From Vitrella brassicaformis CCMP3155 (lineage: Eukaryota; Protista; Chromerida), in NCBI GenBank assembly GCA_001179505.1, contig CDMY01000688.1, positions 231,376 through 295,375 of the forward strand: DNA of 64,000 nucleotides. The letters run 5' to 3'. The notes beneath the pieces were generated by a model. It worked only from the letters and a program-made list of their open reading frames with translations. It was not told the origin of the DNA and ran no database searches. Shown piece by piece: positions 6,815 through 24,370 of the stretch (positions within the stretch are counted from its first letter, which is position 1; each line of letters begins with the position of its first letter). The position numbers and the translations under genes are program-made.

Positions 6815-7397
6815 ATGTCGTCCGCCACTTCTTTCTTCGACCACCGTACCCCGGGAGAGGCCTCGTTTGGTGGTGCCCTGCCTCCTGTGGAGCGGCTGGC
6901 GTCTCCCTGGCGCCTGCCGAGTGCGCACGCCCCTTCTTTTCGCCCAAACCGACCTCCAGCAGGTGAGTACATATGCGTGTGGCCTCGCGCGTCATCTCTG
7001 TTGGGTGCGGTGATGGTGTGGTGTGTGGATGATTTGTAGGGATGAATACGTGGTGCATTTCGTTGCCATGGGTGTGCTCAGATGCCCTCTGTTGCCGTGT
7101 TTGTGCGTGCAGATGAACTGGCGGCTTTTTCTTTTTATACCCGTCTCTTTTTCTCGACGCATTTCTCTTTAGGTGGGTGAGGTGGGTGACTGCCTCATTG
7201 AGTTTGGTGTTGACGCGCACGTCAGAGTCCCTGTCTGCTGCTTTCCAGATATGCGTTTCCTTTGGCCCGACGAAAAGAAAACCGAGAAAAAAAGACAGAT
7301 TTTAAGCATTTTTCTAATCAATCTTTCTGTCTTGCAGCAGGCCGGGAAGCTTCACTTCGATGACAACAACCTGCCCATGGAGGAGACATGCGCATGA
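6815..7397 (+). CDS. Short hypothetical spliced gene or first exons (MSSATSFFDHRTPGEASF...)
   Basis: ATG 6815, exon ends at a canonical AG|GTGAGT donor (~6962), and further small exons are plausible up to TGA 7395-7397. No homology recognised. Confidence 0.35.
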
Positions 7398-7399
7398 AA

Positions 7400-8140
7400 C
7401 ACAATGCCTTGGTACCTCGCTCCAGAAATTTTCTTGGCTCGGCCACAAGGCCACGCAGCAAGACGGTACACATTGACCGAAAAACGCGCCAGCCATCACG
7501 CCACCTTTGATGCGGTGTGGTGTGTGTGCGTTGTGGATGGGTGAGTGCAGGTCTGAAGGACGACATCGACACGACATTCGGCGGGCCCACCAAGCCATAC
7601 CTCGCTCCAGAGGTTGTCTTGGGTGTGCCGTACGACAAGAGAATCGACCTCTCAAGCCTGGGACAGCTTGTGGCCAACCACCCCCCACCAGCCACTTACA
7701 AGAAAGGGGTTCCGGGACTTGGAAAGCAGCGGGGAAGGACACAAAGGGCGGTGTGCTGTGTCTCGACAAGATCGACGAAGTCTACACGCAGCAAGACGGT
7801 ACACATTAACCGGAACACGGAACACACGCCATCACGCCACCTTTGATGCCCTGTGGTGTGTGTGCGTTGTGGATCGGTGAGTGCAGGTCTGAAGCACTAC
7901 ATCGACTGGACCAAGCCATACCTCGCTCCAGAGGTTGTCTTGGCTGTTCCGTACGAGTCAATCGACCTCCTAAGCCTGGGACGCCTTGTCGCCGGTCTGC
8001 TGTTGAAGAAGCCCAAGCACCACCCACCAGCTACCTTTAAGAAGGGGGTTCCAGGACTTGGCAAGCAGCGGGAAAGGACACAAAGGGCCAAGGAGGCCCG
8101 ACTGCGACGACAGGCAAGAAAACAATTGGATCACTCATAG
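7400..8140 (+). pseudogene. Three tandem remnants of protein kinase subdomains VIII-IX (CMGC/DYRK-like)
   Basis: WYLAPEIFL (~7405), TKPYLAPEVVLGVPYDKRIDLSSLG (~7590) and TKPYLAPEVVLAVPYESIDLLSLG (~7910). No ATP-binding loop, HRD or DFG found nearby. Confidence 0.6.
7453..8085 (+). repeat. Tandem duplication, ~333 bp period (7453-7750 vs 7786-8085)
   Basis: Both copies share ACGCAGCAAGACGGTACACATT...GGTGAGTGCAGGTCTGAAG, CCAAGCCATACCTCGCTCCAGAGGTTGTCTTGG and GGGGTTCC.GGACTTGG.AAGCAGCGGG.AAGGACACAAAGGGC. Confidence 0.9.
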
Positions 8141-8305
8141 CACAGATTCTCATGAGATGTGTGTGTGTGTCTGTCCGCTCGCCCTGCAGGCCTGCCTCGA
8201 CACAGCTCGGCCATCAGGGGATGTTGGCAAGTATGGTAAGGATGGGAAGGCATATATGTGGACTGTCTTCATCGCTCTGTGTGTCTGTGTCTCAAGGTTG
8301 AGGGT

Positions 8306-8382
8306 CGTGTGTTACGGCCGTTCAAGACAGGGCGACTTCGCCCATGGCTGCCTACATTTTATATCCACAGTCCCATTCTTCA
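8306..8382 (+). repeat. Dispersed repeat copy (partner 11413-11489) with a GC hairpin and TACATTTTATATCC core
   Basis: CGTGTGTTACGGCCG.TCAAGACAGGGCGACTTCGCCCATGGCTGCCTACATTTTATATCCA is near-identical in both copies. Confidence 0.9.
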
Positions 8383-8763
8383 GTCGTCTATTGCTGCTGT
8401 TGTCGTGTGCTGTGGTCGCAAGTCATATCGTGCTCTTGAGACAAGGCGGCGTAGGTCAAGGCACTGGCCATTCCGGCACTTCTCGCTCGTAAGAATGGAT
8501 TGAAGGGAAATGTCAGCCAGCCTGTGTGTCTCTGCGTGTCATGGTTTAGAGACGCCCTGGCTTCCTCTTCTGGCGGCGGCGACGGCGACACCCTCAAGCC
8601 CATCGCCGACGACGACAGCCTCAACAAATTACCGGGAAAGCCGAGAGGCAGCGAAGCAGGGAAATCGGGTGAAAGGGGCACGATGAGGTGCATACTACAT
8701 GAGAGAAGGCATCCAAACATCCCTCTTTCGCGGTCCGTGTTGGTTTCAGGGCAATCGGCCCAC

Positions 8764-8772
8764 AAGCTCGCA
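8764..8772 (-). promoter_or_regulatory. TGCGAGCTT motif upstream of the Vitrella-family fragment
   Basis: AAGCTCGCA on + strand within a pyrimidine-rich non-coding stretch. Confidence 0.3.
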
Positions 8773-8961
8773 CGAGGTGGAGCTGGTTTCTCTTTCTCTT
8801 TCCCCACGTTGTTCTCGCGCTCCGTAGAGTTAGACTAAGTTATTCTCACCATGAATAACGCAGCCCACGACTTGGCCCACCGCCAGGCCACCTCCTCCGC
8901 ACGGTTCGGCGACTCGCCTTACGACACACTCTGATGCAGCACACACTCTGCCGGCCCTCAT

Positions 8962-9720
8962 GTGTGTGCGTGGTGTGGGCAGGTCGCTCTTGAGTTCACG
9001 GGCAACGTGCTGCCGCGCCACGGCTTTGTGTGCCACCGGGCACTGGAGACCGTGGAGGGCGCGACGACCGTGGAGGTGGTGGACCAGGATGATTGGGAGC
9101 CCGACCCAGATGACGCCGAACAGCCCGACCCGCTGGTGTTCGAGCACTTGCCCCCCAACGCATTCTCCGCCGCTACACTCCTGTGGATTCACACCATCAA
9201 TGGGCTCGCGATTGCCCGAAGGCTGGTGACCAAGATGCCCGCCGTCAAACGCATTGACCTCTCCCAGCCCTACCCGACAGAGGAGGACGCGGTGGGGGTG
9301 CTGCAGGCGGTGGGCGGCGAGAGGGAACTGGAGCGTTTCGAGGCCAAGTGGGTGAAGGGTGTGGGCGAGGGGGGGCTGACGTGGGGCGACATAGCGGACC
9401 AGCTGCCGACCATCTCAAAAGTGGATGTTACTGTAGAAGGTGAGCTGCGAACAATTACCTCCTCAGCTTACCGGCTTATTCATTCGGTGCTGTGCTGTCT
9501 GTGTGTCTGTCTGTCTGTCTGTCTGTGTGTGCAGTGCCTGACGATTTGGGTGATGGCGATGCCGCCGGTGAGTTCGGCATCGCCTGCGTCACCGAGGGAT
9601 CAAGGAGCTCTCCTTCCGGCCGTGGCCCGGCGACGCCTTCAAGCGGCTGGTGGATGAGCGGACGCATGGCGACGCCATCGAGGGGCTGGACGGGCGATAT
9701 GACATTAGCTGGGGGGGATA
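8962..9720 (+). pseudogene. Fragment of an expanded Vitrella-type lineage-specific family, frameshifted
   Basis: VFEHLPPNAF...KRIDLSQPYPTEEDAVGVLQAVGGERELE...GGLTWGDIADQLPTI. Second exon VPDDLGDGDAAGEFGIACVTEG continues as IKELSFRPW only if one G is added at GGG 9596-9598. Family assignment is from memory. Confidence 0.5.
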
Positions 9721-9799
9721 TTTGGGACAACATGCGAAACGGCCTCCCTCCTTGATGTGTGTATCTGTGTCATATATGGGCTTCTCGTGTGTCTGGCAG

Positions 9800-10144
9800 G
9801 GCGATCGCCTTGTTCCACGAGAGGGTCTACGTGATGAGCCAGGAGCTGATGCGCGCCGCCAAGATGTACAACCACGTAACACCCAGAGACATACTGGTCT
9901 TCATCAAACACTTCCTTGGTACGTTTCTCGCGCCACTCAAACGACACACATACACCATGGCTAGGTGGCTGTGCGATTTGCTGTGTGTGGTATGTGGTGT
10001 GTGGCAACAAATCAGGTTTGGTGAGGGAGAAGCGGGAGCTGACCAAGTTCAAGGACACGGAAGAGCAAGTGGACGAGATGCTGGTCTGGCTGGCCGAGAA
10101 GGACAAGGACCTCGCGGTCCTTGCCGCCAAGAAACGACGCACGG
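9800..10144 (+). pseudogene. Cytoplasmic dynein heavy chain fragment (end of AAA4 into stalk coil 1), two exons, internal deletion
   Basis: AIALFHERVYVMSQELMRAAKMYNHVTPRDILVFIKHFL|GLVREKRELTKFKDTEEQVDEM aligns with the dynein-1 TPRHYLDFINHY...EKR...LRKIKETVDQVEEL motif, missing ~12 aa. Intron 9919-10015 is retained. Confidence 0.8.
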
Positions 10145-10203
10145 GTGTGTTTTTGTTTCCTTTTCCGTTAGCTTAGCATTTCCATCATCGCATCGTCTTA
10201 ACC

Positions 10204-11260
10204 ATGAATACCGCCAACCCCCACTTCCACGGAAGCCGCCAGCCTGCCGCTGTTGTAACCGCCAAGACCTCGTCATCCCCTGCCCTGACCCTCAAGCCCA
10301 TCTCAGACGAGGGCAGGGACGCCCAGAAGGCCAAGGACGCCCAGCCGCCCACGCCCACGGCCAACGGCAGCGATGCGACGGCGGACGGGGGGCTACATGT
10401 ACATGATGGAGAGGGCGGGGGAGGGACTGGTGATGTGGCGGTGTCGCGGATGGATAGCTCTGCGTTCAAGGCGCTGTGTGGCAGGGCCGGCGAGACCAAG
10501 AAGAGGGGCGACATCAACTGGCAGCTTAACAGGACTCGGTAGGCAAGGCGGACAGCGCAGAGCAGACCCCGACACGTATACATATACATGTATGTTATGT
10601 GTGTATGCATGCATGTATGTCCTGCATGTGTGTCCTGTTGTCTTGTCTGTCCCTGCCTGCGTGTGTCAGCATTGCGGTGGCCGAGTGGGAGGCGGCCTTG
10701 AAGCTGCTAGAGTCCCTGCCCTGCGCGTCGCTGCCGGCCCCCAAGGACACTGACGAGAGATTCTGTGCGAGGTGAGGTCACCGACCGACCAACCGACCGA
10801 CCGACCGACAGGCCACACGCACATCTATCTGTCTTGTGTTGTGTGTGTGTATTGGGTGTTTGGTCAGTTGTTGGCGGGCGACGCCGATGCGGCCCAGGAG
10901 GACACCAGCAAGGAGGACGAGGCCACCCCCGAGCCCCTTGCCACCGAGCCCCCCGCCCCCGAGCAGGCAGCGGCCACCGCCCCGAAGAAACAGAAGAAGA
11001 AGAAGAAGAAGAGCACCAACAAGAACAAGAACAAGGACAAGGCGCCAAAGGAGGCGGCGGGGGAGACTCTGCCATCCGAGGCCCCCTCTCTTGTCCCCGC
11101 CAAGACGCCGTCATCCCCTGCCCTGACCGTCTTCAAGCCGCCCATCCTTCCAGAGGAGGCCAAGGACGCCCAGAAGGGCAAGAAGAAGCCGCCCACGCCC
11201 ACGGCCAACGGCACCGAGACCGCCCTCGAGGGAGCGGCCACCGGCAACAAGAAGAAGATG
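10204..11260 (+). other. Two paralogous low-complexity K/P/A-rich coding segments
   Basis: AKTSSSPALTLKPISDEGRDAQKAKDAQPPTPTANG (~10260) vs AKTPSSPALTVFKPPILPEEAKDAQKGKKKPPTPTANG (~11100). A TLKPIADD relative lies at ~8590. Confidence 0.55.
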
Positions 11261-11361
11261 GCATTGGTGCCTACATTTTATATCCAGACGAGATTTTATC
11301 TCATACCCAGAGGTATCCGCAGGTCTGCATCTTTGGATTCATGTGTATACAGCATGAATAT
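11257..11361 (+). repeat. Dispersed repeat copy (partner 14275-14403) containing TACATTTTATATCCAGACGAGATTTTATCTCA
   Basis: Near-identical to 14275-14403 but lacks the 24-nt TGTGACGAAGCTGCGGTCTGTCGA segment. Confidence 0.9.
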
Positions 11362-11686
11362 ATGCCTCCTTCTTGGGTGTCGTATGTGTGAGGCTGCCCA
11401 GGAAGGAGCCCGCGTGTGTTACGGCCGCTCAAGACAGGGCGACTTCGCCCATGGCTGCCTACATTTTATATCCATAGTTTCATTCTTCAATCGATTGCCC
11501 GTCGACTCATACATACAAGCGCTTCTACAAGAACATTTCCACAAAAGGTACACACTTTATCGCCACATCTAGCCAGCTAGATTTTGTGTGTCCCCATGTC
11601 TGTCTCCGCATTCGTTGTGCTTTAGGTCGGTATCAGCTTGATCGAATATATGGGGGGCCTGATCCAATGGTGCACTAGTTCGAGGG

Positions 11687-12148
11687 CCCGATGTGGACAA
11701 GAAGCGGTCCGAGATGCTGAGACTCACCGTACACGTCCTTATGCGCGTCGATGTGATTTGTGTGTGCCTTGGCTCCCTGTCTGTGGTGGTGGTGTGTCAG
11801 GCGAGTTCCGTGTCAAGATTAGCGAGTTGGACGACAGCCTAAAGATGGCGCTTGCCAACGGCAAGGGCAACAGCACCACCCTAGACGACCACTCCGTCAT
11901 GGCCATACTGGAGACGTCCTTCGCCGACACATCCTTCATGAAGAGCCTCCAGAGCGCCCTCCAATTCGGCACACAGCTCCTCGTCGAGGTAAGATGACCA
12001 AATAGCATCTCACACCCATCCCCCCCATCCATCCACACGTGTGTGTGTGTGTGTGTGTCCTGTCTGGCAGGATGTTGAGCGTGTGGATCCCATACTGCTG
12101 AACCCGGTGCTGACCCGCAAGCAGGGCGGGCGTGTGCTCCTCGTCCAG
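11687..12148 (+). pseudogene. Cytoplasmic dynein heavy chain fragments (strut/buttress piece fused upstream of an AAA5 piece)
   Basis: PDVDKKRSEMLRL|GEFRVKISELDDSLKMAL...LDDHSVMAILET matches dynein-1 [29 protein letters not shown]...LDDD. It is joined to TSFADTSFMKSLQSALQFGTQLLVE|DVERVDPILLNPVLTRKQGGRVLL, matching [38 protein letters not shown]...GGRVLI. Introns at 11729-11800 and 11989-12070. Confidence 0.85.
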
Positions 12149-12567
12149 GTGGGTGAGCTTTGAAAGCACAGACATCTTCAATCTATGTGTGTCAGGCCCA
12201 GGACAACGTGCCCCATGTGACCAATCAATCAACACAGACACACACATACACACACACGCACTCACACAGAGGGAGAAGGCAGTGCTGCAGGCAGGTGTCT
12301 GACTGTGTGTCTCTTATGTTGTATGGTCTATATCAGGATTGGACACACCCTCTCGTGGCCAGGTCTGTGGTCCTCACTCTCAAGAAGATCATCAAAGCCA
12401 AAGGCAAACACGACCCACAACACACAGGCACTAAACCGACATGCGTCCAGCCTGTATATGTCTTGTTCAGCTGCGGGCCGCAGTTTGGTATGGCTAGGTG
12501 GGTTGCTGTGGCCGGAGGCCGTCTCCCTAGCGACGGCCACCGGCCACACGACTTAGAGGCCGACCCA

Positions 12568-13790
12568 TGACCCCTCTACCACCTTGTCCAAGACCGCGCA
12601 GAAGGCCGAGCAGGAGGAGAAGGCCGAGGACGACGCGGGTGCTCTGAAGGAGGGGGGCAGGCGGATGTCCAACCATGCCCGGCGAATACAAGAGGGAATC
12701 AGGGGGAGAGAGGAGCGAGAGGCCGCAGAGCAGAGGATAAGGGCGGAGAGGGTCGCAGCGCGAAAGGAGAGGAAAAGGCTGGGGAAGCCGCAAAGAAGAA
12801 GACGGCCAAGGATGAGAAGGAAAGAAAAGGCTGTAGGGAAGGCAGGCCTGAAGTGCTTCATTTGACGCTTGTTTGTCATATTCCCTCAGGAATGCAGCTG
12901 CCGTCTGCGTCGACCAAGATCGAGGCACCCAGCCAAGTGCCTAAGTTCGTCGCCGCCCCGGCAGGTGATTGTTGGCAACGTAAAGCGTGTCCTTGATCCC
13001 TATGGCTACTCTCTAGAGGACATCCAAGAGCTTGTCGAGATATGCGGATACGACCAGAGAGAGGTACGTACACACACCTGCAGCCAGCAGACACACGAGA
13101 CACCAAAGCTCATCACACACACACTCCCATTTACCGCATGAATCATCTGTGGGTTTCCCTCCCTTCCTTGACTCCTTAGGTCGAGATTGCTGTGTGGAAC
13201 ATCTTGCAGGACCAGAAGGGCCACGAGAGCGGGAAGCCACCACGCGAGAGCGGGCCAAGGCCAAGCGCGAGGAGTTGCAGAAGGAGCAGCAGGAGGCCGC
13301 CAAGCAGCGCCACATACCCGGCCTCACGGCAGCTCCCACTGCGAACGCATACGGAAGAGGGAGCTGCGGTGACGTGAAGCGGAGATGGGTCGTGAAGGGA
13401 GCGATTCCGACATGAAGCTGCTCGAGAGGGCGGCATGGACATCATGAAGGCAGTCGGCGTGCACCCACCTGCTGCTGCCGCCGAGGCTGCAGCGCCCAAG
13501 CCTTCTCAGCCCTGCCGCAGACTTGCACCGCCTGCCACCGTCCGGCCACCGCACCCCGGCAAGATATGGGTCGTGAAGCAAGCGGCGACATGAAGCTGCT
13601 GTGTGTTTATGTTTTGCGTGTTTGTGTTTATGGTTTGTGATGTGGGGGTCTTGCTGAGACCTGCCCCAAGGCCGCCAAGCGAGAGCGGGCCAAGGCCAAA
13701 CGGGAAGAGTTGGAGAAGGAGCAGCAGGAGGCCACCAAGCAGTGTGACGTCCCTGGCCTGATAGCAGCTTTCCATACGGCCTGCAGCAGG
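12568..13790 (+). pseudogene. Charged low-complexity and UBA-like coding fragments with a duplicated RERAKAKREEL module
   Basis: VKRVLDPYGYSLEDIQELVEICGYDQRE|VEIAVWNIL resembles a UBA-like three-helix bundle. RERAKAKREELQKEQQEAAKQ (~13250) and RERAKAKREELEKEQQEATKQ (~13680) are paralogous, and the frames are discontinuous. Confidence 0.4.
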
Positions 13791-13974
13791 CCATTCAGCG
13801 TCGAAAGCGGCCCAGCGGCAAGGCCCCGGTAGGCAGTAAGTTCGAATTGTATAAGCAAGCTTTATACCTCCACCACACCCGGGAATGTAATGTCTCTCAT
13901 TATCCGTTGCTTGCTGCGTGTGCTTGTCTGTTTGTCTGTCTGTCTGTCTATGACTTTTAGGGAGGGAGGATGAG

Positions 13975-15123
13975 ATGGGTGCCAGTACGCAAACGATGGA
14001 TTGGGTCAAGGAGGGCTTTGACGGCATGCGAAAGAAAAGCGGCAGGCCCCCCCCGGTAAGAAATTGTGCGTATCATGACAAGATATGTGCTTGCACTCGG
14101 TTGCTGCGTGTGGTTGTCTATGCCGTGCAGGGCATGAAGTGGGTGCCGATTCGGGCTTGGAAAGCAGCGGAAAGAACCCACCGAGCGAAGGAGGCCAGAC
14201 AGAGACAGCAGGCAAAAAAACGCGATGAAGCGCGGTAATGTAAGTCAGTTCAATTGTGCCTCTTATGTCTCGCAGATGCATCGGTGCCTACATTTTATAT
14301 CCAGACGAGATTTTATCTCATGTGACGAAGCTGCGGTCTGTCGATACCCACAGGTATCCGCAGGTCTGCATCTTTGGATTCATGTGGTTACAGAATGAAT
14401 ATGTGTTTTTTGACAGATGCCGGTAATTGCGCCGCATCTGGAAAACAATTGGAGCCACGCCTTTGATGACCTGATTCGCAAGACGGCCGACGATTATCAC
14501 GTGAGGTGGGAGGACTATCAAGAGCGCGGCGGTTACGACAACAGAATTGAAGTGAGCTTCGCAGGTGAGTGTACACGTAAAGGAACGACACAATGTCGTA
14601 GATGACTGTGGTCCTGTCTGGACCCGCAAGCACCGAAACAAATGTGTCATCCACCACGGCCTCTGCCGCCAGGCAGCAGTGCACCGGGGAACTCTTCACG
14701 GCTCTCAGGAACCTCATTGATGAGGAAGAAGCGGCTGCTGGCGTGCCCGAGGAGGACAGGTTTGCCTCCTGGTTCGGCGTCGGCTACGTCCACGAGATGC
14801 GGTGCATTGGGTGTGGACACGGGTGGTTTGGCGCCAGTCAGCATGAGGGCAGCGTGCTGGTGTGTGTGGATGAGACGATGGAGATGCACAAGGGCGAGTG
14901 GGACCTCATGAGGGCTGTCGACAGGGCGGTGAGACGGCCCGAGCCCAAGGAGGCCGTGTGTGGCGCACGAGAGACATGCGATTTGTGTGGCGCCCAGCTG
15001 CTTTGTCAAAGGTCAGCTCGACAGGAAGAGACCAAAGACCCATTGCCATATGTTCGTCTCCTTTTTGTTTTTGTTATCAGGCGGTCGTTCTTCGACTCAC
15101 GCGAAGTGGGCACCAATGGCTGA
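13975..15123 (+). pseudogene. Spliced hypothetical gene ending in a partial USP (ubiquitin protease) fingers-like segment
   Basis: FASWFGVGYVHEMRCIGCGH...DLMRAVDRAVRRPEP...ETCDLCGAQLLCQRS fits the USP CxxC...CxxC fingers pattern. No Cys box or His box seen, and one exon phase mismatch. Confidence 0.4.
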
Positions 15124-15595
15124 TTTCATCGTCTCGCTGCCTGTCGCCCCCGCCGCCACCTCCCACCCCTAGCTGACCATATCAACAAATCTGCCATATC
15201 AACACGGTGAGCGACCGATCACAACACAACACAACACAACGCAACGCAAGGCAACAACATTCGCGCGATAAGCAGAGGATGTCTTTATTTGTGTTCCCCC
15301 GCATCGCGCATGTGGGGCGCTGTGTGTATGTCTGCAGAGGGAGGAGAATGTCGGCATTTGCTGTCTACATTTTATATTCGTGGCATCTTCTTCAATTCCT
15401 CCGCACCCTATCAGTGAATCGATTCGGCTGGTGACAGGAGTGGTGCCTGTCCGTCTGCAAGAGCTACCCCAACTATGACGTCTTCTTCGTCGGCTTGACA
15501 CACACCGACACACCCAACGCCACGATCCCTTCTGCCTCCCTCTCCCTCTTCGTCACACACCAACACCAACACCAACACCAACACCAGCAGCTGAG

Positions 15596-15868
15596 GTGTC
15601 AATCATCGTGTCTCACGTTCTTGCGTCCGAGATGGAGCTGTTCGCTGGCTTCCCGGATCCCGCGCGCCCGCCATCAGTACTGCACTGGGAGCATTTCAAG
15701 ACCGAGGCAAAGAAGATGCTCCATCTGACGGACGAGGCGTTTGAGAACTTGCACATCGGCGCCCTCTTGGACCGCACCGCAGCCGTCGTCCAGTGGGGGC
15801 AGGCTATAACACAGCAACAGGTATTTATCCAGAATACAAGTCAGGCCTGGACATGCACTCGCACTTAG
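15596..15868 (+). other. Coding-like fragment of unknown family
   Basis: GC3-rich codons: SEMELFAGFPDPARPPSVLHWEHFKTEAKKMLHLTDEAFENLHIGALLDRTAAVVQWGQA. No clear start. Confidence 0.3.
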
Positions 15869-16009
15869 ACAGGCCAACGGTGTGGTCGCTGGATGTGTGC
15901 CTTTTTGCAGCTTTCTGCGTTGAAGCTCAGTGAGGCCCCTTCCCTGGGGAACATAGCATAGGTGCGGCCATTGGCACACGGAGATTGAGCGATGGCGTTT
16001 CCACCGACA

Positions 16010-16047
<38 letters not shown>

Positions 16048-16907
16048 CCTATCTCTCCGCACAGGTTGACCTGACGGGCGGCGCCGCTGCTGCGGCATCA
16101 GGACCGGTTTCGGGGCCTCCGCGATCCAAGGTGTGTAGAAGCACATACCCACAGGCCCCCTTTTGTCGCTCTCTCACTGTGGGTGCCTTCCTCGCTCTGC
16201 CAGGCGCCTCCTATTCTAGTGCGCCCACCGCCGCCCAAGCACCCGTGTAAGTGTGCGCACCTGCGACAGCAGCAGGCAGCCACAGAAGAGGGACACTGTC
16301 TGTGTGTTGTCTCTTTGTGGTGTCAGTCGAGATAGAGAAGTACACTCCGTGGATGCTAGGCCAGCGAGAGTCATCGCGGGTACGTATGAGCACGCAGATG
16401 GGGGAGAGCACCTACGCGTCATCCGCCCCCACACACCACACGTGTCTTGCCTGTTGGTTGCCTTGTCTGTCTTTCTTTCTGTCTATCAGGCGCCACTCAA
16501 GCAGAGACCCGGTGAGGCGGGGCTGGAGACGCTGGAGACGCCCCCTATGCCCATCCCTCCGCCTTGACATGCAGCACCGGGTGTGCCAAGGCCCAAGATG
16601 GCCTTCTACGGTACGTCCATTCAAACCCGCACTTGAGTCCTCTCAATGATTGTGTGTGTATGTGGGATGCCTCCAGAGACGTGCCAGCGTTGGCAAGAGG
16701 GCCGTCTGCAGGACCCCATGGCGACCATGCTGCAGCCGCGACACACGGAAGGGCCGACAGGGAGGCCTGCACACCGCCACGCCGCAAGACTGCCGCGCCC
16801 ACGCGACGTCAGCCAGCGGCAGGGGCACTTGCTTCTAGCCGATCGCTGTTTACATTTTATATCAGCGGTCTTCTTCCATTCCACTGCACCAGCGATCGAG
16901 CTGTAGT

Positions 16908-17280
16908 ACCCATGCCGAGTATGCATTTATCCGCGCGTCACGTGGCGCGTGTGTGACCTTTTCTCAGACCCTTCTGTCGCCCCACATACGGTCGCGCGTG
17001 TTTGTGCGTGTGTGCGTGTGTGTATCGACTCGACTCCTGCCCGTGGGGCACTTCAAGTCGATATGACTCCGAGGGGCAGAAGTCGATATGTCTCCCTCCA
17101 CAGCCTGTGCATGACATCAATCCACAACCCGCGGAGTCCCAATCCTCTTTGATGGTCTCTGCAGGTAGGCACAGACACATCGGCCTCATCCCTCCGGTAA
17201 GATAGAATATGGGACTGAGGGGTGAGTCGTTGCGGCGAGAGAGGGTTTGGCTGATGTAATCTCGTGATGGTGTACGTGTG
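16908..17280 (+). repeat. Non-coding duplicated element, copy 1, upstream of the secreted gene at 17650
   Basis: Shares GTCACGTGGCGCGTGTGTGACCTTTTCTCAGACCCTTCTGTCGCCCCACATACGGTCGCGCG, GGGGCAGAAGTCGATATGTCTCC, CCTCTTTGATGGTCTCTG and AGATAGAATA.(.)GGGACTGAGGG with 20248-20520. Confidence 0.9.
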
Positions 17281-17649: not shown

Positions 17650-19378
17650 ATGAAAACCGCTGTCTCCATGCTGTTTGCCGTCGCCCCTCTGCTGCTCCAC
17701 GTCATGGCCGCCACTGGCAAGCCTGTTCGGCCCCAGCTGAGCGCTAGCCTCGCGCTCATCCAAACCCAGGCGCAGCGGGCAAAGGCCATGGCCCTCGCCG
17801 CTAACGAGATGGCGCTCACCGCTGACGAGACGGCAGCCACGGCTGTCAAGACCATCAACGCGGCAGAACAACAGCTCAAATATCTCGCAGGTACATGCGT
17901 TGTGTGCATCGGAAGCAATGCACAGCTTGGATGCACGGGTTTACATAACCGATGTCTTTCTTGCGACAGGCCAATGGCCCACCAGCATGGAACCGCCGAC
18001 TGACAAAGGCCGGCAGAACGCATGCGCATGGATCCGTACATGAGAGTTCCTTTCTCTCTTTATTGGTTCAGATGAGATGTCTCGAATTCTGAAGTTCCAC
18101 TCAAAGCAGGAATACAAATGAACGGACTGGTTTCACATTCTGGGGCTCAACGTTCAATACCCAGACATAAGCACTGATGACGTCGCAAGGGCTTACACGA
18201 AGCTGAGCCAACTAGTAAGCGTCCACAGCCGATCAGAAAACACATAAACATTTGTACTCTCCGGTGCGTCCACATACAGATACAGCCGGCGAGAAACCAC
18301 CCTAAGCTACAGGAGAGATTCACAGCCGCCCAAAAGCTGGTACCACAAACCTCTACACACAGACAGACAGACAGACAGACAGGGGGAATTGGGCCTTCAC
18401 TCTATGACATGCATGTGATGCAGCTGGATATGGCAAAACAGCATTTGTTGGTCGAGTGCACAAAGGATCACCAGTGCGGGAAAGTCGGTTCGTGGGGACA
18501 AGCCTTCAAGTGCTTCGCGAAGAGAGACTTCACCGGTATGTGCAAGGTTAGAGACTTGATATGCAGATGCGGATCTGAAACCGTCATCTTTCTTTGGTGG
18601 CTCTCTTGCGCATGTCGCGAATGAAGATCGCAGGGGAGGAGCACGACCAATGTGAAGACGAAAAGCAAACGCACAGGCTGGCGCACAAGTGCAACCGCTC
18701 GCTGCCGGACATCGAGCTCAAATGCGAAGCAACCCAATTCGGCAAGGTTTGCGTGAAGCAGGGCTGTTACAGCGACGAGGACTGCCAGAACAATGAGAAT
18801 GAGCCCCTGTGCTTCAAGCCAGTCCTCTTTGAGTCCAAAAGATTTGGAAAAGCCGGCGCATGCCGCGTAAGAAATGCTGATCCAAGTTTGGCTTGCCTAT
18901 CTTTGGCATTCACGAATGAATTTCGTGTGTGCTGGTACATTTTCCTCGCTCAGAGCGTCGGAGTTGTGTCTGACCAGTGCAAACCAGATGGTACGCATCC
19001 CTGTGATGCCGGCCTTCAGTGCACACCGGTGTGGTTCGATAAGTCGAAGCACGCCTGCGTGCTTTCCCAGTGTTCGGACGACAACGACTGCTTGGGCAAC
19101 AAGTACGGCCACCTGTGCTTCAAGCAGCTCGGGGGAAATGGACGAGAATGCAGGGTCAGGAACACAGAGAGGGTAGCTAGCCAGACGAAAAATCCCTGGA
19201 TGGACCTTTCCTGCGTGTGCGTCCATGTGTGCAGGACAAGGGCGACATCCAGGTCCGTTGTGATGAGACACATCCATGTTATGAAGGCCTGGTGTGCACC
19301 GGAAAACGCGACACGCGTGGATGGGGCCCTTATCGGAATCGCCGGTGCCTCTGGCCGTCTGATATAGATGATGTTTAA
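17650..19378 (+). CDS. Secreted protein: signal peptide, Ala-rich helix, degenerate J-domain, Cys-rich CxxDxDC repeats; carries an in-frame TGA (possible pseudogene)
   Basis: MKTAVSMLFAVAPLLLHVMAA leader. Exons are phase-compatible (17650-17890, 17970-18035, 18072-18214, 18280-18339, 18424-...,19235-19378). Modules CTKDHQC, CYSDEDC, CSDDNDC. In-frame TGA at 18119-18121. Confidence 0.65.
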
Positions 19379-20247: not shown

Positions 20248-20520
20248 CCCGCCGAGTATGCCTGTTATCCGCGGGTCACGTGGCGCGTGTGTGACCTTTT
20301 CTCAGACCCTTCTGTCGCCCCACATACGGTCGCGCGCGTCTGCATGCGTGTGTGTGTGTGTGTGTATCGACTCGACTACTGCGGGGCAGAAGTCGATATG
20401 TCTCCCCCACAGCCTCTCCCGTTCCTCTTTGATGGTCTCTGGGCAGGGGTAGGTAGATAGAATACCGGGACTGAGGGATGAGTCGCGGCGAGGTTTAATT
20501 TGGCTATATGTAAATACCGT
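20248..20520 (+). repeat. Non-coding duplicated element, copy 2, upstream of the gene at 20578
   Basis: Paralogue of 16908-17280. Confidence 0.9.
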
Positions 20521-20577: not shown

Positions 20578-21734
20578 ATGGCTTTCCCTCGCCTCGCACT
20601 CGTCGCTGCTTGCCTGGCCGCCTTGTCATTTGTCTCTGCGCAGCAATGTTGACGGGGCGGTTTCCGTTCAGAGTGGAAGAGCGGTGCCGAAACATTACGA
20701 CGGCACTCAGACAGATGCTCCTAGGTGTGATGTTTCTCTGCGCAGCTGCCTCCTAGTGTGCCCACACTTGTTCCTCCGGTAGAATTGCCCACGTTTCCCA
20801 CCTCTCCCATTTTGCCCAACGGAGTATGTGACCCAGAAGGAGCGCTCCGACGCGTCTGCAGGCGTAAGCACTGACCAACTGGACGTGGTGCGCACATATA
20901 TTGTGAACACACGAGTGTATGCTGTGTGCAGAGATTGTCGCGGGCAACCCCACAAGATGGCGCATTGACTCTGGCGATATTGCGGCCGACGACGATCTTT
21001 TGGCCGATGATGACGTCGCGGCTGGTGGCAACGTCATTGCAGGGGGCTATGTGCGTGCAGACGGCAATGTCAAGGCGGGTGGCAACGTAACTGTGGGAAA
21101 CTTTGCCTTTGACGACAGAGTCCCAGTTTTGCCTTTCTCATTATGGCGTAACTCTGACATCGAGGGCAGCATTATGGCGGCTGGCAACGTGTATGTGGGA
21201 AGCCCGAATGAGGAGGTCATCACGTCGCCCTTTGGCACCGAACGTCCCGCTTGGTATGCTCCTGGTGGCAATGTTTTGGCGAGGGGCAGCGTAATTGCGC
21301 AAACAGATCTTGGGGCGAAGCAGTGTGCGTGTGGAGGGGTGGTGACCCGCCGGGCGGTTGCTGATGCTTTCGAGGTGCCCAGCGACTCGCGCAATCAGCC
21401 CCCGACATCCATGGCCGAGTGGGGCGACCGCAATCGGTCGGCGGCCTATGAGGCCTTCCGGCAGCTGCGTGTGCGCTTCGATGGCGACGCCCAGCTCGCC
21501 CTTGCCCCTGCTGAAGTGCACAAGGTCTTCCCTTCGGCTGTCAAGACATTCACGCCACATAATAAGGATGAGAAGCCCGAGGGGCCGGCTGCCGCTGAGA
21601 TGACCATCGACCTCACTCAGCTGGTCTACACACAACTGGCCGTCATGCAAGGCCTTATAAAGGCCAACGACGAATTGAGAAAGGCCAATGACGCCTTGCG
21701 GGGCCGCGTCACTCGTCTGGAGAAGGGCCGCTGA
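20578..21734 (+). CDS. Phage tail-fibre-like protein: hexapeptide beta-helix repeats, Peptidase S74/ICA chaperone-like domain, C-terminal coiled coil; probable signal peptide
   Basis: Signal-like MAFPRLALVAACLAALSFVSA (20578), Pro-rich exon 20746-20863, main exon ~20930-21734. Repeats DIAADD/DLLADD/DVAAGG/NVIAGG/YVRADG/NVKAGG/NVTVGN, then PSDSRNQ...LALAPAEVHKVFPSAVK...IDLTQLVYTQLAVMQGLIKANDELRKANDALRGRVTRLE. The 5' exon junction is unresolved (TGA 20650-20652). Confidence 0.7.
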
Positions 21735-21796
21735 ACCGATCAAACCGCACCCGGTGAGTGGCGTCCGTATTTATCCATCGTACAGACCCCGCGGGA

Positions 21797-21831
<35 letters not shown>

Positions 21832-22594
21832 TATGCGTGTGTGGCAGGGAAGGGCGGCAACAAGGGAGAAGGCGGCAGGGGCGCCGATTCACCCTCCTCG
21901 ACCATTCGCGGGCTGGTCATGTTGTCATTCATGTATAATAGTGAATGTGGCGCTGCTGCTGGCCTCGGGAAGTGAAGTACAGTGACCGACAGGGCGAAGC
22001 CAGCCCCCCGTCGTCTTGGCTTATTATGCCTGTATGTGTGTGTCGTGCTGTGGTTATGGGGCAAACGTGCATTCTTGGATAGTAGTTATTTGTAGAATTC
22101 GCCCGCTCGCTGGCTGTATTATTTGTTTTATGGGGACTTTTCATCCAATGAATGCGGTGCTTGTGAAAGCTGGCGTCATCCATGCTTCCTGCGCCTATCG
22201 TATACATGCATGTTGTGCGTGTCCGTGTCTCTGTGTGTGTGGGTATGGCACGGTGAGTTAGATGTCGTATCTAGGTCCGAGTCGAGTCGAGAGATCGCAT
22301 CTAGGTAGGTCGTAGCGCGTAGGCAGGTAATCGATCGGCCCCCCGTGTGCTGCGTGAAGTTGTACTGTCATACAGGTAGACTGAGGACCCCACGACAGTC
22401 GCTCAACTCAATTGTCCAAATCCATCCATCCCCCCATCCATCCATCGTACTTGCGTCCGCCATCTATACACACGTCAGACACACACAGACAGACAGACAG
22501 ATACACAGACACCACTGCCCGCAACCATTCGTATGCGACAGACAAACGCACTCCCTTTCTCCCTCCCTCCCTCCCTCCCTCCCTCCCTCCCCGA

Positions 22595-22625
<31 letters not shown>

Positions 22626-22738
22626 CACCAGATGCGCCACATCCGATAGCCCCACATATGGACACGAAGGAAGGGAAAGAAAGCAGACTGTACCACACAC
22701 ATACAGACACCCCGCCCGCAGCCAGCCCATCCACTCCC

Positions 22739-24370
22739 TCACGGCGTGGCCTTAGCACGCCCCCTCCTGCCCGTGGCCCGGCCGCCCCTCTCGGTCGCCC
22801 CCACACTGGTACCGCGGCCACTGACGGTCGTGCCGGTCTTGCGCCTCTGCTTGCGCTCGGCGTTCTTGGTCACCTGGGTGTAAAAGAGGAAAATAAGCCG
22901 TATGTTTGTATGTATGGTGAGTATGTGTGTGTATGAAGCTGACCTGCGTGGCCGCGGGAGGCGGTGAGGGCGAGGTGATGGTTGTGCGGCAACGACGGAG
23001 CGGCCGGGAAACGGCGGCCGGAGCCAACCAGGTCTGCAGCAAACCCACCCATCCAGCAATCGATGGATGCATCGAGACTGAGTGCTTTCTTTCCCTGCCC
23101 ACACTTACTTACCTCTACTAGTCCCTCCAACACGCTGATCTGCTCCCCCTCCCCCTGCCGTGCAAACGCCGCCAACTGCGCTACAGACGGCCCCTCACAC
23201 AGGCCCGAGCGGCCGCCCCCCTGCTGCACCGGCATGTGGTGGTGGTCTTGGTGTTTGTCGTTCATGCGGTAGAGGTAGCACGTGTGTCGCTCGTTGGAGC
23301 CGTGCATTGACATGGGCAGCCGGGCGGCGAGGGTGCCGTCCAGACCGAACTCCTCAACCAGATCTGCAGGGGAGAGAAGACACACACACACGACACAGAG
23401 AGAGAATGAGAGCACCTGCTATGCTCATCCACCACCTACCACCGCGGAAGCAGCAGAAGGCGGTGAGAGTGCGCGTGACGTTGGCGATCTCCACGAAACT
23501 GACACATACAGAGCCGCAAAGCACATGTGAGCAAGAACGAGACCTCGATTGATTGGCATTTCCCTGTCTGTCTGTCTGTCTGTGTCCGCTCCCCTACCTA
23601 ATCATGACATCAGCAGGCATGCCCACATCGAATGTGTAGATGTGGGTGGCCGGCTCAAACGTGTCGAGCGCCGTGCAGTCGCCCTTCCCGAAGGCTATAC
23701 GAAGGGGAGGGGGATTGGCCTCTTCTCGTGACTGCACCGCACCATCCACACATGTGTGGACACACACACACATGGACGAACGCGCTGCCTGTGGTGATGC
23801 GGCTGATTGTGTGCGCACCTGCACGATGTTCTTGGCGAAGTGCAGCTGCTGTCGTAGCGATAGGTAGAACGAGGAGGCATCTATCTCCATGCCAACTGCA
23901 GCAACACACACAACGATGAATGCATTCACTCATGGATGGATGGATGGACGGTCTCTGCACTCTCACGTGAGATGATCTTGGGCCGCATCAGCGCCAGCAG
24001 AAGACTCGGCACGCCCCGGCCAGACCCTAGGTCAAGGAACACGGAATCCTGCAACCACAATTCACACGCCACGCGTGAGGCACATCGAATGCTTTCTCTG
24101 CCTGTGCTCACATACATCTTTCATCCCGAACTCGGTCTGCAGGGTGTCGTACAGCGCCGCCAGCGACGAACGCCTATTCTCGCCATACATGCCTGACATG
24201 ACACACCAACCAAACAGCCACACAGAGCCACAAAGCGTTCCACACGATGAGTGTGAGGCCCATTTTCCCGCGCCCCTTGCTGACTGACCATAGGTGGATG
24301 TGGCGAGGCGGGCGAGTTCTTTGCTGAAGAGGGAGGGGATCAACGACTGCAGAAACGCCGTGTCAGGCAT
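22739..24370 (-). CDS. Class I SAM-dependent methyltransferase, DOT1-like
   Basis: MYGENRRSSL, DSVFLDLGSGRGVP (motif I), VGMEID, AFGKGDCTALDTFEPATHIYTFDVGMP; basic C-terminal tail; multi-exon. Confidence 0.7.

What the first reader, a model, noticed from the sequence alone, without database searches (positions are those of the whole stretch)
20930..21734. Intron-containing eukaryotic gene with phage tail-spike architecture (beta-helix repeats + S74 intramolecular chaperone), catalytic Lys replaced
Seen: seven hexapeptide repeats (20976-21101) plus further GNV/GSV repeats. Then PSDSRNQ (Ser 21381-21383), LALAPAEVHKVFPSAVK, IDLTQLV and a terminal coiled coil. Established: Peptidase S74/ICA domains of phage endosialidases and tail fibres, and of MYRF (PSDLRAK...GVIAQEVKEILPEAVK...coiled coil), trimerise the upstream beta-helix and self-cleave using a Ser-Lys dyad (SDxRxK). 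Here the Lys position is Gln (CAG 21396-21398, one base from AAG). Inference: a domesticated phage/viral-type trimeric fibre, probably secreted, whose chaperone stays attached. It could be a wall, adhesin or flagellar-hair component.
Basis: partly seen in the sequence, partly recalled or inferred. Interest (0 to 1): 0.8.

Follow-up and report, generated by a model that had tools for sequence, protein, structure and literature searches.

The report
Algal secreted fibre, dead phage-type cap
This is a real, intron-containing gene of the coral-associated alga Vitrella brassicaformis for a secreted, repeat-built protein; its tail end is a distant relative of the three-chain "chaperone" cap of phage tail fibres and has lost the lysine needed to cut itself off. 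It is one more member of a 13-gene family that this scan has already met elsewhere in the same genome.

Summary
Every motif sits at the stated coordinates.

**The gene.** It is larger than the finding: about 324 aa in three coding exons, with a signal peptide, a Pro-rich linker and a Cys pair. These are followed by seven perfect hexapeptides plus looser GNV repeats, a CxC, an ICA/S74-like domain and a short coiled coil. A fourth exon follows a 3'-UTR intron.

**The domain.**
- Pfam Peptidase_S74 never hits.
- 13 of 17 family members hit the C-terminus of the PHROG tail-fibre family 1980 (best E 2.8e-8).
- A Pfam-verified phage S74 domain hits the same profile positions.
- An AlphaFold model retrieves MyRF ICA first in the PDB, and S74 proteins in two predicted-structure libraries.

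**The Lys to Gln change.** It is not private to this gene. The family consensus is S-x4-Q and never Lys. Loss of self-cleavage and a permanent trimer cap are inferred, not tested.

**The family.** It comprises 13 Vitrella paralogues plus metagenome kin, and nothing else among 1.84 billion representatives. UniRef auto-labels several paralogues as S74; I found no paper.

**This copy.** It also carries a stop that removes an ancestral Gly/Lys-rich tail.

The scan found this family before on other DNA (s1-231063, s1-218456, s1-212003). Interest is moderate.

The parts
20578..20631 (+). Exon 1: start codon and signal peptide (MAFPRLALVAACLAALSF). The 3' end is ambiguous (20631, 20637 or 20643).
   Evidence: Read and spliced models translated. 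It aligns with the N-termini of paralogues P0004 and P0011 (MAFPRLAL..CLA). The NCBI gene model lacks it.
20632..20745 (+). Intron 1, 114 nt, GT-AG with a weak donor (GTCTCT). An 11-nt direct repeat TCTCTGCGCAG lies at both ends (20633-20643 and 20735-20745).
   Evidence: Three in-frame excisions are possible and only this one is GT-AG. No RNA contig covers it, so it is inferred.
20746..20863 (+). Exon 2: Pro-rich linker (LPPSVPTLVPPVELPTFPTSPILP) and the conserved Cys pair CDPEGALRRVC.
   Evidence: the motif C-D-P-E-x6-8-C-[KR]-x-I-[VI]-A-G-N-P is shared with P0002, P0004, P0008, P0010, P0011 and P0024, and it spans the exon 2/3 junction.
20864..20931 (+). Intron 2, 68 nt, GTAAGC...GTGTGCAG, phase 1.
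   Evidence: It is conserved in the orthologous metagenome contig L001 (88% identity). The NCBI model starts at an ATG (20919) inside it.
20932..21734 (+). Coding part of exon 3, including the stop TGA at 21732-21734.
   Evidence: ORF. The exon runs on to 21753.
20976..21101 (+). Seven contiguous hexapeptide repeats (x-V-x-A-x-G type), a beta-solenoid or triple-beta-helix stalk.
   Evidence: AlphaFold places a strand every 6 residues at pLDDT 63-73. Only weak Pfam FapA solenoid hits (E 0.01). The atlas structure neighbours are beta-solenoids.
21102..21323 (+). Irregular continuation of the repeat region (AAGNVYVGS, PGGNVLARGSVIAQ). It is the least conserved part.
   Evidence: dN/dS for the solenoid half is 0.66.
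21324..21332 (+). CxC motif (Cys-Ala-Cys) between the solenoid and the ICA-like domain.
   Evidence: C-x-C in most paralogues.
21381..21398 (+). SDSRNQ: the degenerate Ser-x4-Lys cleavage motif, with Ser at 21381-21383 and Gln at 21396-21398 in the Lys position.
   Evidence: Family consensus is S-x4-Q: Ser in 8 of 11 paralogue types, Gln in 8 of 11, Lys in none. The VIA alignment starts at model residue 24 against MyRF 591, which would place Gln160 opposite K592, but this is a low-confidence part of the model.
21381..21668 (+). ICA / Peptidase-S74-like domain core (helix, beta-hairpin, helix, two strands, start of the long helix).
   Evidence: PHROG 1980 E 7e-4 for this protein and down to 2.8e-8 for paralogues.
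21612..21728 (+). Long C-terminal helix with heptads (Asn or Val at a, Leu at d), a presumed coiled coil.
   Evidence: AlphaFold helix 97-135 of the C-terminal model at pLDDT 84-98. Sequence.
21732..21734 (+). TGA stop, premature relative to the orthologue and paralogues.
   Evidence: L001 has GGA here. The spliced read-on would encode TDQTAPGKGGNKGEGGRGADSPSS, homologous to the Gly/Lys-rich tails of P0010 and P0012. The TGA is also present in the contig of run X1.
21754..21847 (+). Intron 3, 94 nt, GTGAGT...GGCAG, now in the 3' UTR. It contains the (TC)n(TG)n microsatellite.
   Evidence: Record 2 of run X1 joins 21752/21753 directly to 21847/21848 with no other differences. Ends checked.
21848..21964 (+). 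Exon 4 (at least to 21964): formerly the coding Gly/Lys-rich tail, now 3' UTR.

Best explanation
A nuclear, spliced gene of Vitrella brassicaformis CCMP3155 encodes a secreted protein of about 324 aa. After the signal peptide come a Pro-rich linker, a Cys pair, a stalk of hexapeptide beta-repeats and a CxC. The protein ends in a strongly diverged intramolecular-chaperone (ICA / Peptidase S74 superfamily) domain and a short coiled coil. It is one of 13 Vitrella paralogues. In this family the catalytic Ser-x4-Lys dyad has become Ser-x4-Gln. The most likely mechanism is as follows. The coiled coil and ICA-like domain bring three chains together in the secretory pathway and template the upstream beta-repeats into a three-chain stalk, as in phage tail spikes and MYRF. 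Without the lysine the cap is not cut off, so it stays as a permanent trimer clamp on an extracellular fibre. Shown here: the gene structure (in part), family membership, homology and fold of the C-terminal domain, and absence of Lys. Inferred: trimerisation, lack of cleavage and extracellular fibre function. This particular copy has also lost an ancestral Gly/Lys-rich tail through a stop codon.
For: Organism and locus: GCA_001179505.1 contig CDMY01000688.1. Gene model: the spliced 324-aa model has no internal stop, and its N-terminus aligns with paralogues across the exon 2/3 junction. Intron 3 is seen spliced in a contig of run X1, and an exon-3 fragment is seen in run X2. Paralogue P0004 has GTGAGT...CAG introns. 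Family: 19 representatives at E<=1e-3 among 1.84 billion, all named ones from Vitrella. ICA homology: PHROG 1980 is hit by 13 of 17 members with best E 2.8e-8, covering profile positions 339-445 of 449. A Pfam-verified S74 domain (PF13884, E 3.9e-12) of a Citrobacter phage tail fibre hits the same PHROG positions, 323-444, at E 3e-16, and also PHROGs 5481, 5668, 6921 and 6578, which the Vitrella proteins hit too. hhalign of the family profile against that S74 domain gives P 4e-5 on the G-x-x-A-Q-E-V..P-x-A-V motif. Fold: AlphaFold model at pLDDT 66. The Foldseek PDB top three are MyRF ICA 7dc3 (E 0.1, prob 0.89), with VIA Z 5.5 over 101 residues. Every named row in the BFVD top 50 is an S74/ICA, tail-fibre or other phage structural protein, but about half the rows carry no name (best E 2.4e-3). 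Six of seven family sets in the atlas search are S74. ESM features give 30 of 30 hits as S74 at 0.94. Dyad: S-x4-Q consensus with no Lys. K592A and S587A abolish MyRF cleavage, and the coiled coil drives its trimerisation (PMC8326128). Selection: the coding region is 80-92% identical to orthologue L001 against 57-76% in the flanks, and dN/dS of the ICA core is 0.27.
Against: Pfam PF13884 gives no hit for this protein or any paralogue, even at E 10. Family profiles do not reach any solved S74 chain by sequence, and the exhaustive profile search reached no canonical S74 protein. hhalign against endosialidase-type and T5-type S74 domains is not significant. For this protein itself the PHROG E-value is only 7e-4. 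The fold matches are individually weak (TM 0.4-0.6, Z 5.5), and the motif region of the model is below pLDDT 50. No multimer model or experiment supports a trimer. RNA support is thin: two short contigs from runs whose RNA nature is a guess. The premature TGA, an overall dN/dS of 0.48, and a frameshift plus a stop in orthologue L001 leave room for a decaying gene.
Confidence: 0.72

Rival explanations
1. The locus is a decaying or recently disabled paralogue (a pseudogene in the making). Whatever the family does, this copy contributes little.
For: The TGA at 21732-21734 removes a tail that the L001 orthologue and paralogues P0010 and P0012 still encode. The L001 orthologue itself has a frameshift near window 21240 and a TGG to TGA change inside the invariant MAEW. 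dN/dS is 0.48 overall and 0.66 in the solenoid half. Only low-depth RNA-like contigs were found. The donor of intron 1 is weak and ambiguous.
Against: A 324-codon reading frame is intact across three exons, with all family-invariant residues kept. The ICA core has dN/dS 0.27, and coding DNA is clearly more conserved than the flanks. The stop lies 19 nt before the last exon junction and removes only a low-complexity tail. The defects in L001 may be metagenome assembly errors.
Confidence: 0.15
2. The domain still processes itself by a variant chemistry, for example Ser with Gln, His or Arg or a distant base. The mature fibre would then shed its cap as phage proteins do.
For: Ser is kept in 8 of 11 paralogue types at exactly five residues before a conserved Gln. 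This copy also keeps Asp+1 and Arg+3 of the canonical SDxRxK. Conservation of the site suggests that it still matters.
Against: K592A abolishes MyRF cleavage, and the equivalent Lys is described as indispensable in endoNF (PMC8326128). P0002 has Gly at the Ser position and P0011 has Thr at the Gln position. Gln is a poor general base.
Confidence: 0.08
3. The C-terminal region is only a coiled-coil-rich module that resembles ICA by convergence. The protein would then be a monomeric beta-solenoid with a helical tail, unrelated to phage fibres.
For: There is no Pfam S74 hit. VIA wide search is dominated by generic long helices at Z about 5.5. The best solved-structure matches are not formally significant.
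Against: The PHROG matches extend about 100 residues upstream of the coiled coil, at E down to 2.8e-8, and coincide with the S74 part of those profiles. hhalign gives P 4e-5 on the non-helical AQEV..PxAV motif. Two independent models, ESM and AlphaFold, retrieve S74 proteins almost exclusively.
Confidence: 0.05

Closest known systems
[quoted passage not shown]
   Same: It sits at the C-terminal end of a beta-repeat stalk. The order of elements is the same: helix, hairpin, 'AQEV..PxAV' helix, two strands, then a long helix or coiled coil. Sequence homology to tail-fibre C-termini is detectable (PHROG 1980, E to 2.8e-8), and the fold matches.
   Different: The host is a eukaryote, and the gene has spliceosomal introns and a signal peptide. 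The Lys of the Ser-Lys dyad is replaced by Gln family-wide. Pfam's model does not recognise it. The hairpin loop is shorter. No enzymatic or receptor-binding head is recognisable upstream.
MYRF / MrfA ICA domain with its beta-helical stalk (PDB 7dc3)
   Same: This is the only well-studied eukaryotic use of the domain. A stalk of hexapeptide repeats lies upstream, a trimerising coiled coil lies downstream, and it is the best solved-structure match (Foldseek rank 1-3, VIA Z 5.5 over 101 residues).
   Different: MYRF is an ER-membrane transcription factor with an NDT80 DNA-binding domain and an active Ser-Lys dyad that releases it. The Vitrella protein is secreted, has no DNA-binding or transmembrane part, and lacks the Lys.
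S74-capped fibre proteins of polinton-like viruses and other protist viruses (PMC12220804)
   Same: These are eukaryote-associated fibre proteins ending in Peptidase_S74, and so a possible source of the domain in protist genomes.
   Different: Those are viral genes recognised by Pfam. Here no viral neighbours are seen, no relative was found in IMG/VR, and the gene has introns and 12 dispersed paralogues.
Other Vitrella S74 genes reported earlier by this scan (s1-231063, s1-218456, s1-212003)
   Same: Same genome and the same dead-lysine family: secreted, spliced and repeat-built.
   Different: This is a different paralogue on another contig. It keeps the most canonical-looking motif (SDSRNQ) and carries a private premature stop.

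Membership tests
Peptidase S74 / ICA (Pfam PF13884) | Score above Pfam's gathering threshold for PF13884 | tested here: not met
   No hit at E<=10 for the window protein, its C-terminal piece or 14 paralogues. Controls hit: endoNF CTD 5.7e-10 and Citrobacter phage gp23 3.9e-12. PF13884 has 58 positions and covers only the SDxRxK..PeaV half.
Peptidase S74 / ICA superfamily (remote homology) | Significant profile similarity to the C-terminal chaperone region of phage tail fibres | tested here: met
   PHROG 1980 is hit by 13 of 17 members, with best E 2.8e-8; the window protein scores 7e-4 to 8e-4. The same profile positions are hit by a Pfam-verified S74 domain. hhalign gives P 4e-5.
Peptidase S74 / ICA superfamily | ICA fold (helix, hairpin, helix, two strands, long trimerising helix) | tested here: met
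   The AlphaFold model (pLDDT 66) has that element order. MyRF ICA is Foldseek rank 1-3 in the PDB, with VIA Z 5.5 over 101 residues. BFVD and atlas neighbours are almost all S74, as is the ESM model. Individually these are weak; together they agree.
Peptidase S74 (as an autoprotease) | Catalytic Ser-x4-Lys dyad (S911/K916 in endoNF, S587/K592 in MyRF) | tested here: not met
   SDSRNQ: Ser present, Lys replaced by Gln. No paralogue has Lys at that position.
Peptidase S74 (as an autoprotease) | Self-cleavage of the cap after trimer assembly | not testable with these tools
   Needs expression and immunoblot or mass spectrometry.
Tail-spike-like trimeric fibre | Homotrimer with an intertwined or triangular beta-helical stalk | not testable with these tools
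   Only monomer prediction was available. The monomer model of the repeats shows strands at period 6 with pLDDT 63-73. Pfam solenoid hits are all below threshold.
Vitrella secreted dead-ICA family | Signal peptide, CDPE..C-x-x-I[VI]AGNP, hexapeptide repeats, CxC, MAEW..AYEAFRQLRV..FPSAV..TIDLTQL[LV]YTQ, coiled coil | tested here: met
   All blocks are present, with E 2.9e-53 to the family core profile. The GLMAP or Gly/Lys-rich C-terminal tail is missing because of the TGA.

The most novel reading that the evidence does not exclude
The conserved Ser-x4-Gln site marks a deliberate 'frozen' version of the phage assembly device. The ICA cap would never be released and would serve as a permanent trimer clamp, so that Vitrella builds a set of 13 secreted three-chain beta-helical fibres by a phage tail-fibre folding principle. 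These could be parts of its laminated cell or sporangium wall, or adhesins. That would be a second, independent eukaryotic use of the domain besides MYRF, and the first structural one.
Probability: 0.3. Interest if true: 0.55.

Novelty: new variant of a known kind. Interest (0 to 1): 0.4.

Why it matters
Outside viruses, the ICA/S74 domain is studied in only one eukaryotic protein family, MYRF, where self-cleavage is the whole point. Here a free-living relative of apicomplexan parasites has expanded a secreted family in which the same device has lost its catalytic lysine but keeps the serine and a conserved glutamine. If the cap really stays on, it offers a natural experiment on what the chaperone does apart from cutting, and a candidate for unknown extracellular fibres of chromerids. 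Practically, the public gene model for this locus (271 aa, single exon) misses the signal peptide exons. Pfam-based annotation will miss the whole family. For this one gene the gain is modest, because the scan has already described sister genes.

Tried and rejected
- Pfam, NCBIfam and PDB sequence searches of the protein, its pieces and family profiles gave no S74 hit, only coiled-coil noise.
- The first AlphaFold run on the whole protein with 6 sequences was useless (pLDDT 41).
- VIA wide search was swamped by generic long helices.
- hhalign against endoNF CTD, an 11-sequence endosialidase-type S74 alignment built from phage records, and T5 pb1 was not significant. That S74 subtype is too distant; a typical 'GLVAQEV..PEAV' S74 worked.
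- A word search with endoNF CTD to collect S74 sequences returned only 3 near-identical fragments, because of the length window.
- tblastn of the Vitrella domains against 50,697 phage records found nothing significant.
- The IMG/VR scan with the family alignment found no viral relative.
- A MAFFT alignment with one phage S74 did not place SDIRLK on SDSRNQ reliably, so positional equivalence rests on spacing and on the start of the structural alignment.
- A search for a downstream PIEAL/GLMAP exon found none.
- Logan contig L017 is plain genomic DNA and says nothing on splicing.
- Contamination or a viral insert is rejected. The contig is a 295-kb nuclear scaffold with unrelated host genes on both sides, and the family has spliceosomal introns.

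Full report
**1. What is in the sequence**

The window is part of Vitrella brassicaformis CCMP3155, assembly GCA_001179505.1, contig CDMY01000688.1 of 295 kb. The ORF at 20919-21734 is the public gene model, a single-exon protein of 271 aa.
- Seven exact hexapeptides lie at 20976-21101: DIAADD, DLLADD, DVAAGG, NVIAGG, YVRADG, NVKAGG, NVTVGN.
- Looser GNV/GSV units follow them.
- PSDSRNQ has Ser at 21381-21383 and CAG at 21396-21398.
- LALAPAEVHKVFPSAVK, IDLTQLV and a terminal heptad helix are all there.

**2. Gene model**

The ATG at 20919 lies inside an intron. A canonical intron (GTAAGC...CAG, 20864-20931) joins an upstream exon (20746-20863) to 20932. The junction rebuilds the motif CDPE-x7-C-R-Q-IVAGNP, which is contiguous in paralogues P0002, P0004, P0008, P0010, P0011 and P0024.

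Further upstream, 20578-20631 encodes MAFPRLALVAACLAALSF. This is a classic signal peptide, nearly identical to the start of P0004 (MAFPRLALLVGVCLAF).

The intron between exons 1 and 2 is ambiguous. An 11-nt direct repeat lies at both ends, and three excisions keep the frame. Only 20632-20745 is GT-AG, and its donor is weak. No RNA contig covers it.

The resulting protein has 324 aa, or 326 or 328 with the alternative junctions.

Downstream, a contig of run X1 joins 21752/3 directly to 21847/8. That is a GT-AG intron of 94 nt in what is now the 3' UTR. Run X2 has a 163-nt contig inside exon 3. Both runs are only guessed to be RNA, so expression is likely but thinly supported.

Paralogue P0004 has GTGAGT...CAG introns at other positions. 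This is a resident nuclear gene family, not a contaminant.

**3. The family**

- The word search found two Vitrella proteins at 36-39% identity plus metagenome fragments.
- An exhaustive profile search with the C-terminal core found only 19 representatives at E<=1e-3 among 1.84 billion proteins, none of them a canonical S74 protein.
- Cluster look-ups show that every named member is from V. brassicaformis CCMP3155. With this locus that makes 13 paralogues.
- The unnamed members come from ENA and JGI metagenome contigs.
- UniRef automatically calls six of the paralogues 'Peptidase S74 domain-containing protein' and one 'polymer-forming cytoskeletal protein'.
- I found no paper that links S74 with Vitrella or other myzozoans.

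**4. Is the C-terminal domain an ICA/S74 domain?**

Direct tests by Pfam fail for every member. Sequence profiles against the PDB also fail. Three other lines agree, however.

(a) PHROG profiles.
- The window protein hits the last 70 positions of PHROG 1980 (tail fibre protein) at E 7e-4.
- 13 of 17 family members hit it, with best E 2.8e-8, over profile positions 339-445 of 449. That is about 100 residues, starting well before the coiled coil.
- A Citrobacter phage tail-fibre C-terminus is a bona fide Pfam S74 domain (PF13884, E 3.9e-12). It hits the same PHROG positions (323-444, E 3e-16).
- It also hits PHROGs 5481, 5668, 6921 and 6578, which the Vitrella proteins hit too.
- So the part of those profiles that the Vitrella family matches is the S74/ICA domain.

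(b) Profile against sequence. The family profile against that S74 domain gives P 4e-5 on the GLVAQEVQEVLPEAV / LGLAAxEVxxLFPSAV motif.

(c) Fold.
- An AlphaFold model of residues 136-271 with 17 family sequences reached pLDDT 66. Its element order is helix, hairpin, helix, strand, strand, long helix.
- The top three Foldseek matches in the PDB are the MyRF ICA domain, 7dc3 (E 0.1, prob 0.89). VIA-align gives Z 5.5 over 101 residues.
- In BFVD, every named row among the best 50 is an S74/ICA, tail-fibre or other phage structural protein, though about half the rows carry no name (best E 2.4e-3).
- In the ESM Atlas, six of seven family sets are S74, including MYRF.
- The Atlas's own model and the language-model features also point only to S74.

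Pfam's failure is understandable. PF13884 has 58 positions and covers just the SDxRxK-to-PeaV half, which is the part that has decayed here.

I conclude that the domain is a divergent member of the ICA/S74 superfamily, with confidence about 0.85. It does not qualify as a Peptidase_S74 by Pfam's rule or by its catalytic residues.

**5. The catalytic site**

In endoNF (S911/K916) and MyRF (S587/K592) a Ser-x4-Lys dyad does the cutting, and S587A or K592A abolish it (PMC8326128).

Here the only candidate is S-D-S-R-N-Q. Right-aligning the paralogues on the invariant AEW shows Ser in 8 of 11 paralogue types and Gln exactly five residues later in 8 of 11. The others have Arg, His or Thr there, and none has Lys.

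The replacement is therefore old and family-wide, not a single recent base change in this gene. This copy and its orthologue L001 (SDSRDQ) simply keep the most canonical-looking remnant: Asp+1 and Arg+3.

The spacing from this Ser to the LRVR strand is 25 residues. That falls within the range seen in real S74 domains: 18 in the Citrobacter phage and about 30 in endoNF. The VIA alignment begins at model residue 24 against MyRF 591, which would put Gln160 opposite K592. That part of the model is below pLDDT 50, however, and a MAFFT alignment did not settle it.

Loss of self-cleavage is thus a strong inference, not a result.

**6. The N-terminal repeats**

The hexapeptides are generic beta-solenoid material:
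- Pfam hits to FapA, MinC_C and an ice-binding-like adhesin domain are all weak and below threshold.
- The language-model hits score below 0.9; the few with a family name are bactofilin, T4 tail fibre, a phage pectate-lyase domain and hyaluronidase, and most have none. The structural neighbours are beta-solenoids.
- AlphaFold places a strand every six residues at pLDDT 63-73.

MyRF's stalk just upstream of its ICA domain is also made of hexapeptide repeats forming a triangular prism (PMC8326128), so a three-chain stalk is the attractive reading. I could not run a multimer model, and a single-chain solenoid is not excluded.

**7. State of this copy**

A 2.6-kb metagenome contig (L001, ENA ERZ893895) is collinear with 20806-23346 at 78% identity. 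Coding DNA is 80-92% identical and the flanks 57-76%.

dN/dS against L001:

| Region | dN/dS |
|---|---|
| Whole exon 3 | 0.48 |
| ICA core | 0.27 |
| Repeat half | 0.66 |

L001 has a frameshift and a stop inside MAEW. These may be assembly errors or decay.

Conversely, L001 has GGA where the window has the TGA stop. The spliced continuation of both copies encodes a Gly/Lys-rich tail (TDQTAPGKGGNKGEGG...), homologous to the C-terminal tails of P0010 and P0012. So the window gene has lost that tail through a nonsense change, which is also present in the X1 contig. All structured domains remain. I put about 0.15 on the locus being on its way to a pseudogene.

**8. Mechanism, comparison and verdict**

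Most likely the protein enters the secretory pathway and trimerises through the coiled coil and ICA-like domain. These template the beta-repeat stalk, as in tail spikes and MYRF. Lacking the lysine, the protein keeps its cap. The Cys pair before the stalk and the CxC after it could lock the chains by disulfides. What the fibre does (wall layer, adhesin, hair) is unknown.

Compared with phage S74 and MYRF, the architecture and fold are the same. The catalytic lysine, the cellular context and the absence of a recognisable head domain differ.

The scan has already reported sister genes of this family in the same genome (s1-231063, s1-218456, s1-212003) with the same reading. My calls reproduce it independently for this locus. 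What they add:
- the PHROG-to-Pfam bridge
- the S-x4-Q consensus
- the corrected gene model
- the private stop codon

Novelty is a new variant of a known kind at the family level. For this single locus the interest is moderate (0.4).

Noticed in passing
window 20919-21734 (public model) against 20578-21734: The NCBI gene model for this locus is a single-exon 271-aa ORF whose ATG lies inside intron 2. It therefore misses the signal-peptide and linker exons. Other members of the family may be mis-modelled too; P0026, for example, is a 1154-aa fusion with a tubulin-tyrosine-ligase-like gene.
   Followed up: partly
L001:1-2601 (ENA ERZ893895 metagenome contig), equal to window 20806-23346: This is a collinear orthologous locus at 78% nucleotide identity, so an uncultured close relative of Vitrella exists in public metagenomes. 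Its copy has a 1-nt frameshift and a TGG to TGA change in the invariant MAEW, but lacks the window's TGA.
   Followed up: partly
window 20633-20643 and 20735-20745: An 11-nt direct repeat, TCTCTGCGCAG, lies at both ends of the first intron, 102 nt apart (a multiple of three). This is reminiscent of target-site duplications of introner-like insertions.
   Followed up: no
window 16969-17070 against 20307-20405: A stretch of about 100 nt just upstream of this gene is 84% identical to the edge of the mosaic cassette region that other first-stage notes describe (6815-16925).
   Followed up: no
window 18594-19367 (+): An upstream ORF has two copies of a Cys-rich unit (C..D[ED][DN]DC...LCFK...G.CRVRN) and no Pfam hit. 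It overlaps an annotated 294-aa gene (about 17668-19263).
   Followed up: partly
window 22700-22900 and 23100-23346 (- strand gene, about 22739-24370): Blocks that are 89-98% identical to L001 mark the conserved exons of the neighbouring minus-strand gene (328 aa, with only a faint DOT1 hit on record).
   Followed up: no
family alignment A4; P0002, P0003, P0004, P0005, P0008, P0009, P0013, P0017, P0018, P0020: Most paralogues end in a conserved GPIEALQK..GLMAP motif. A subgroup (P0010, P0012, the window gene's lost tail and L001) ends instead in a Gly/Lys-rich tail. So there are two kinds of C-terminal tail, both of unknown role.
   Followed up: no
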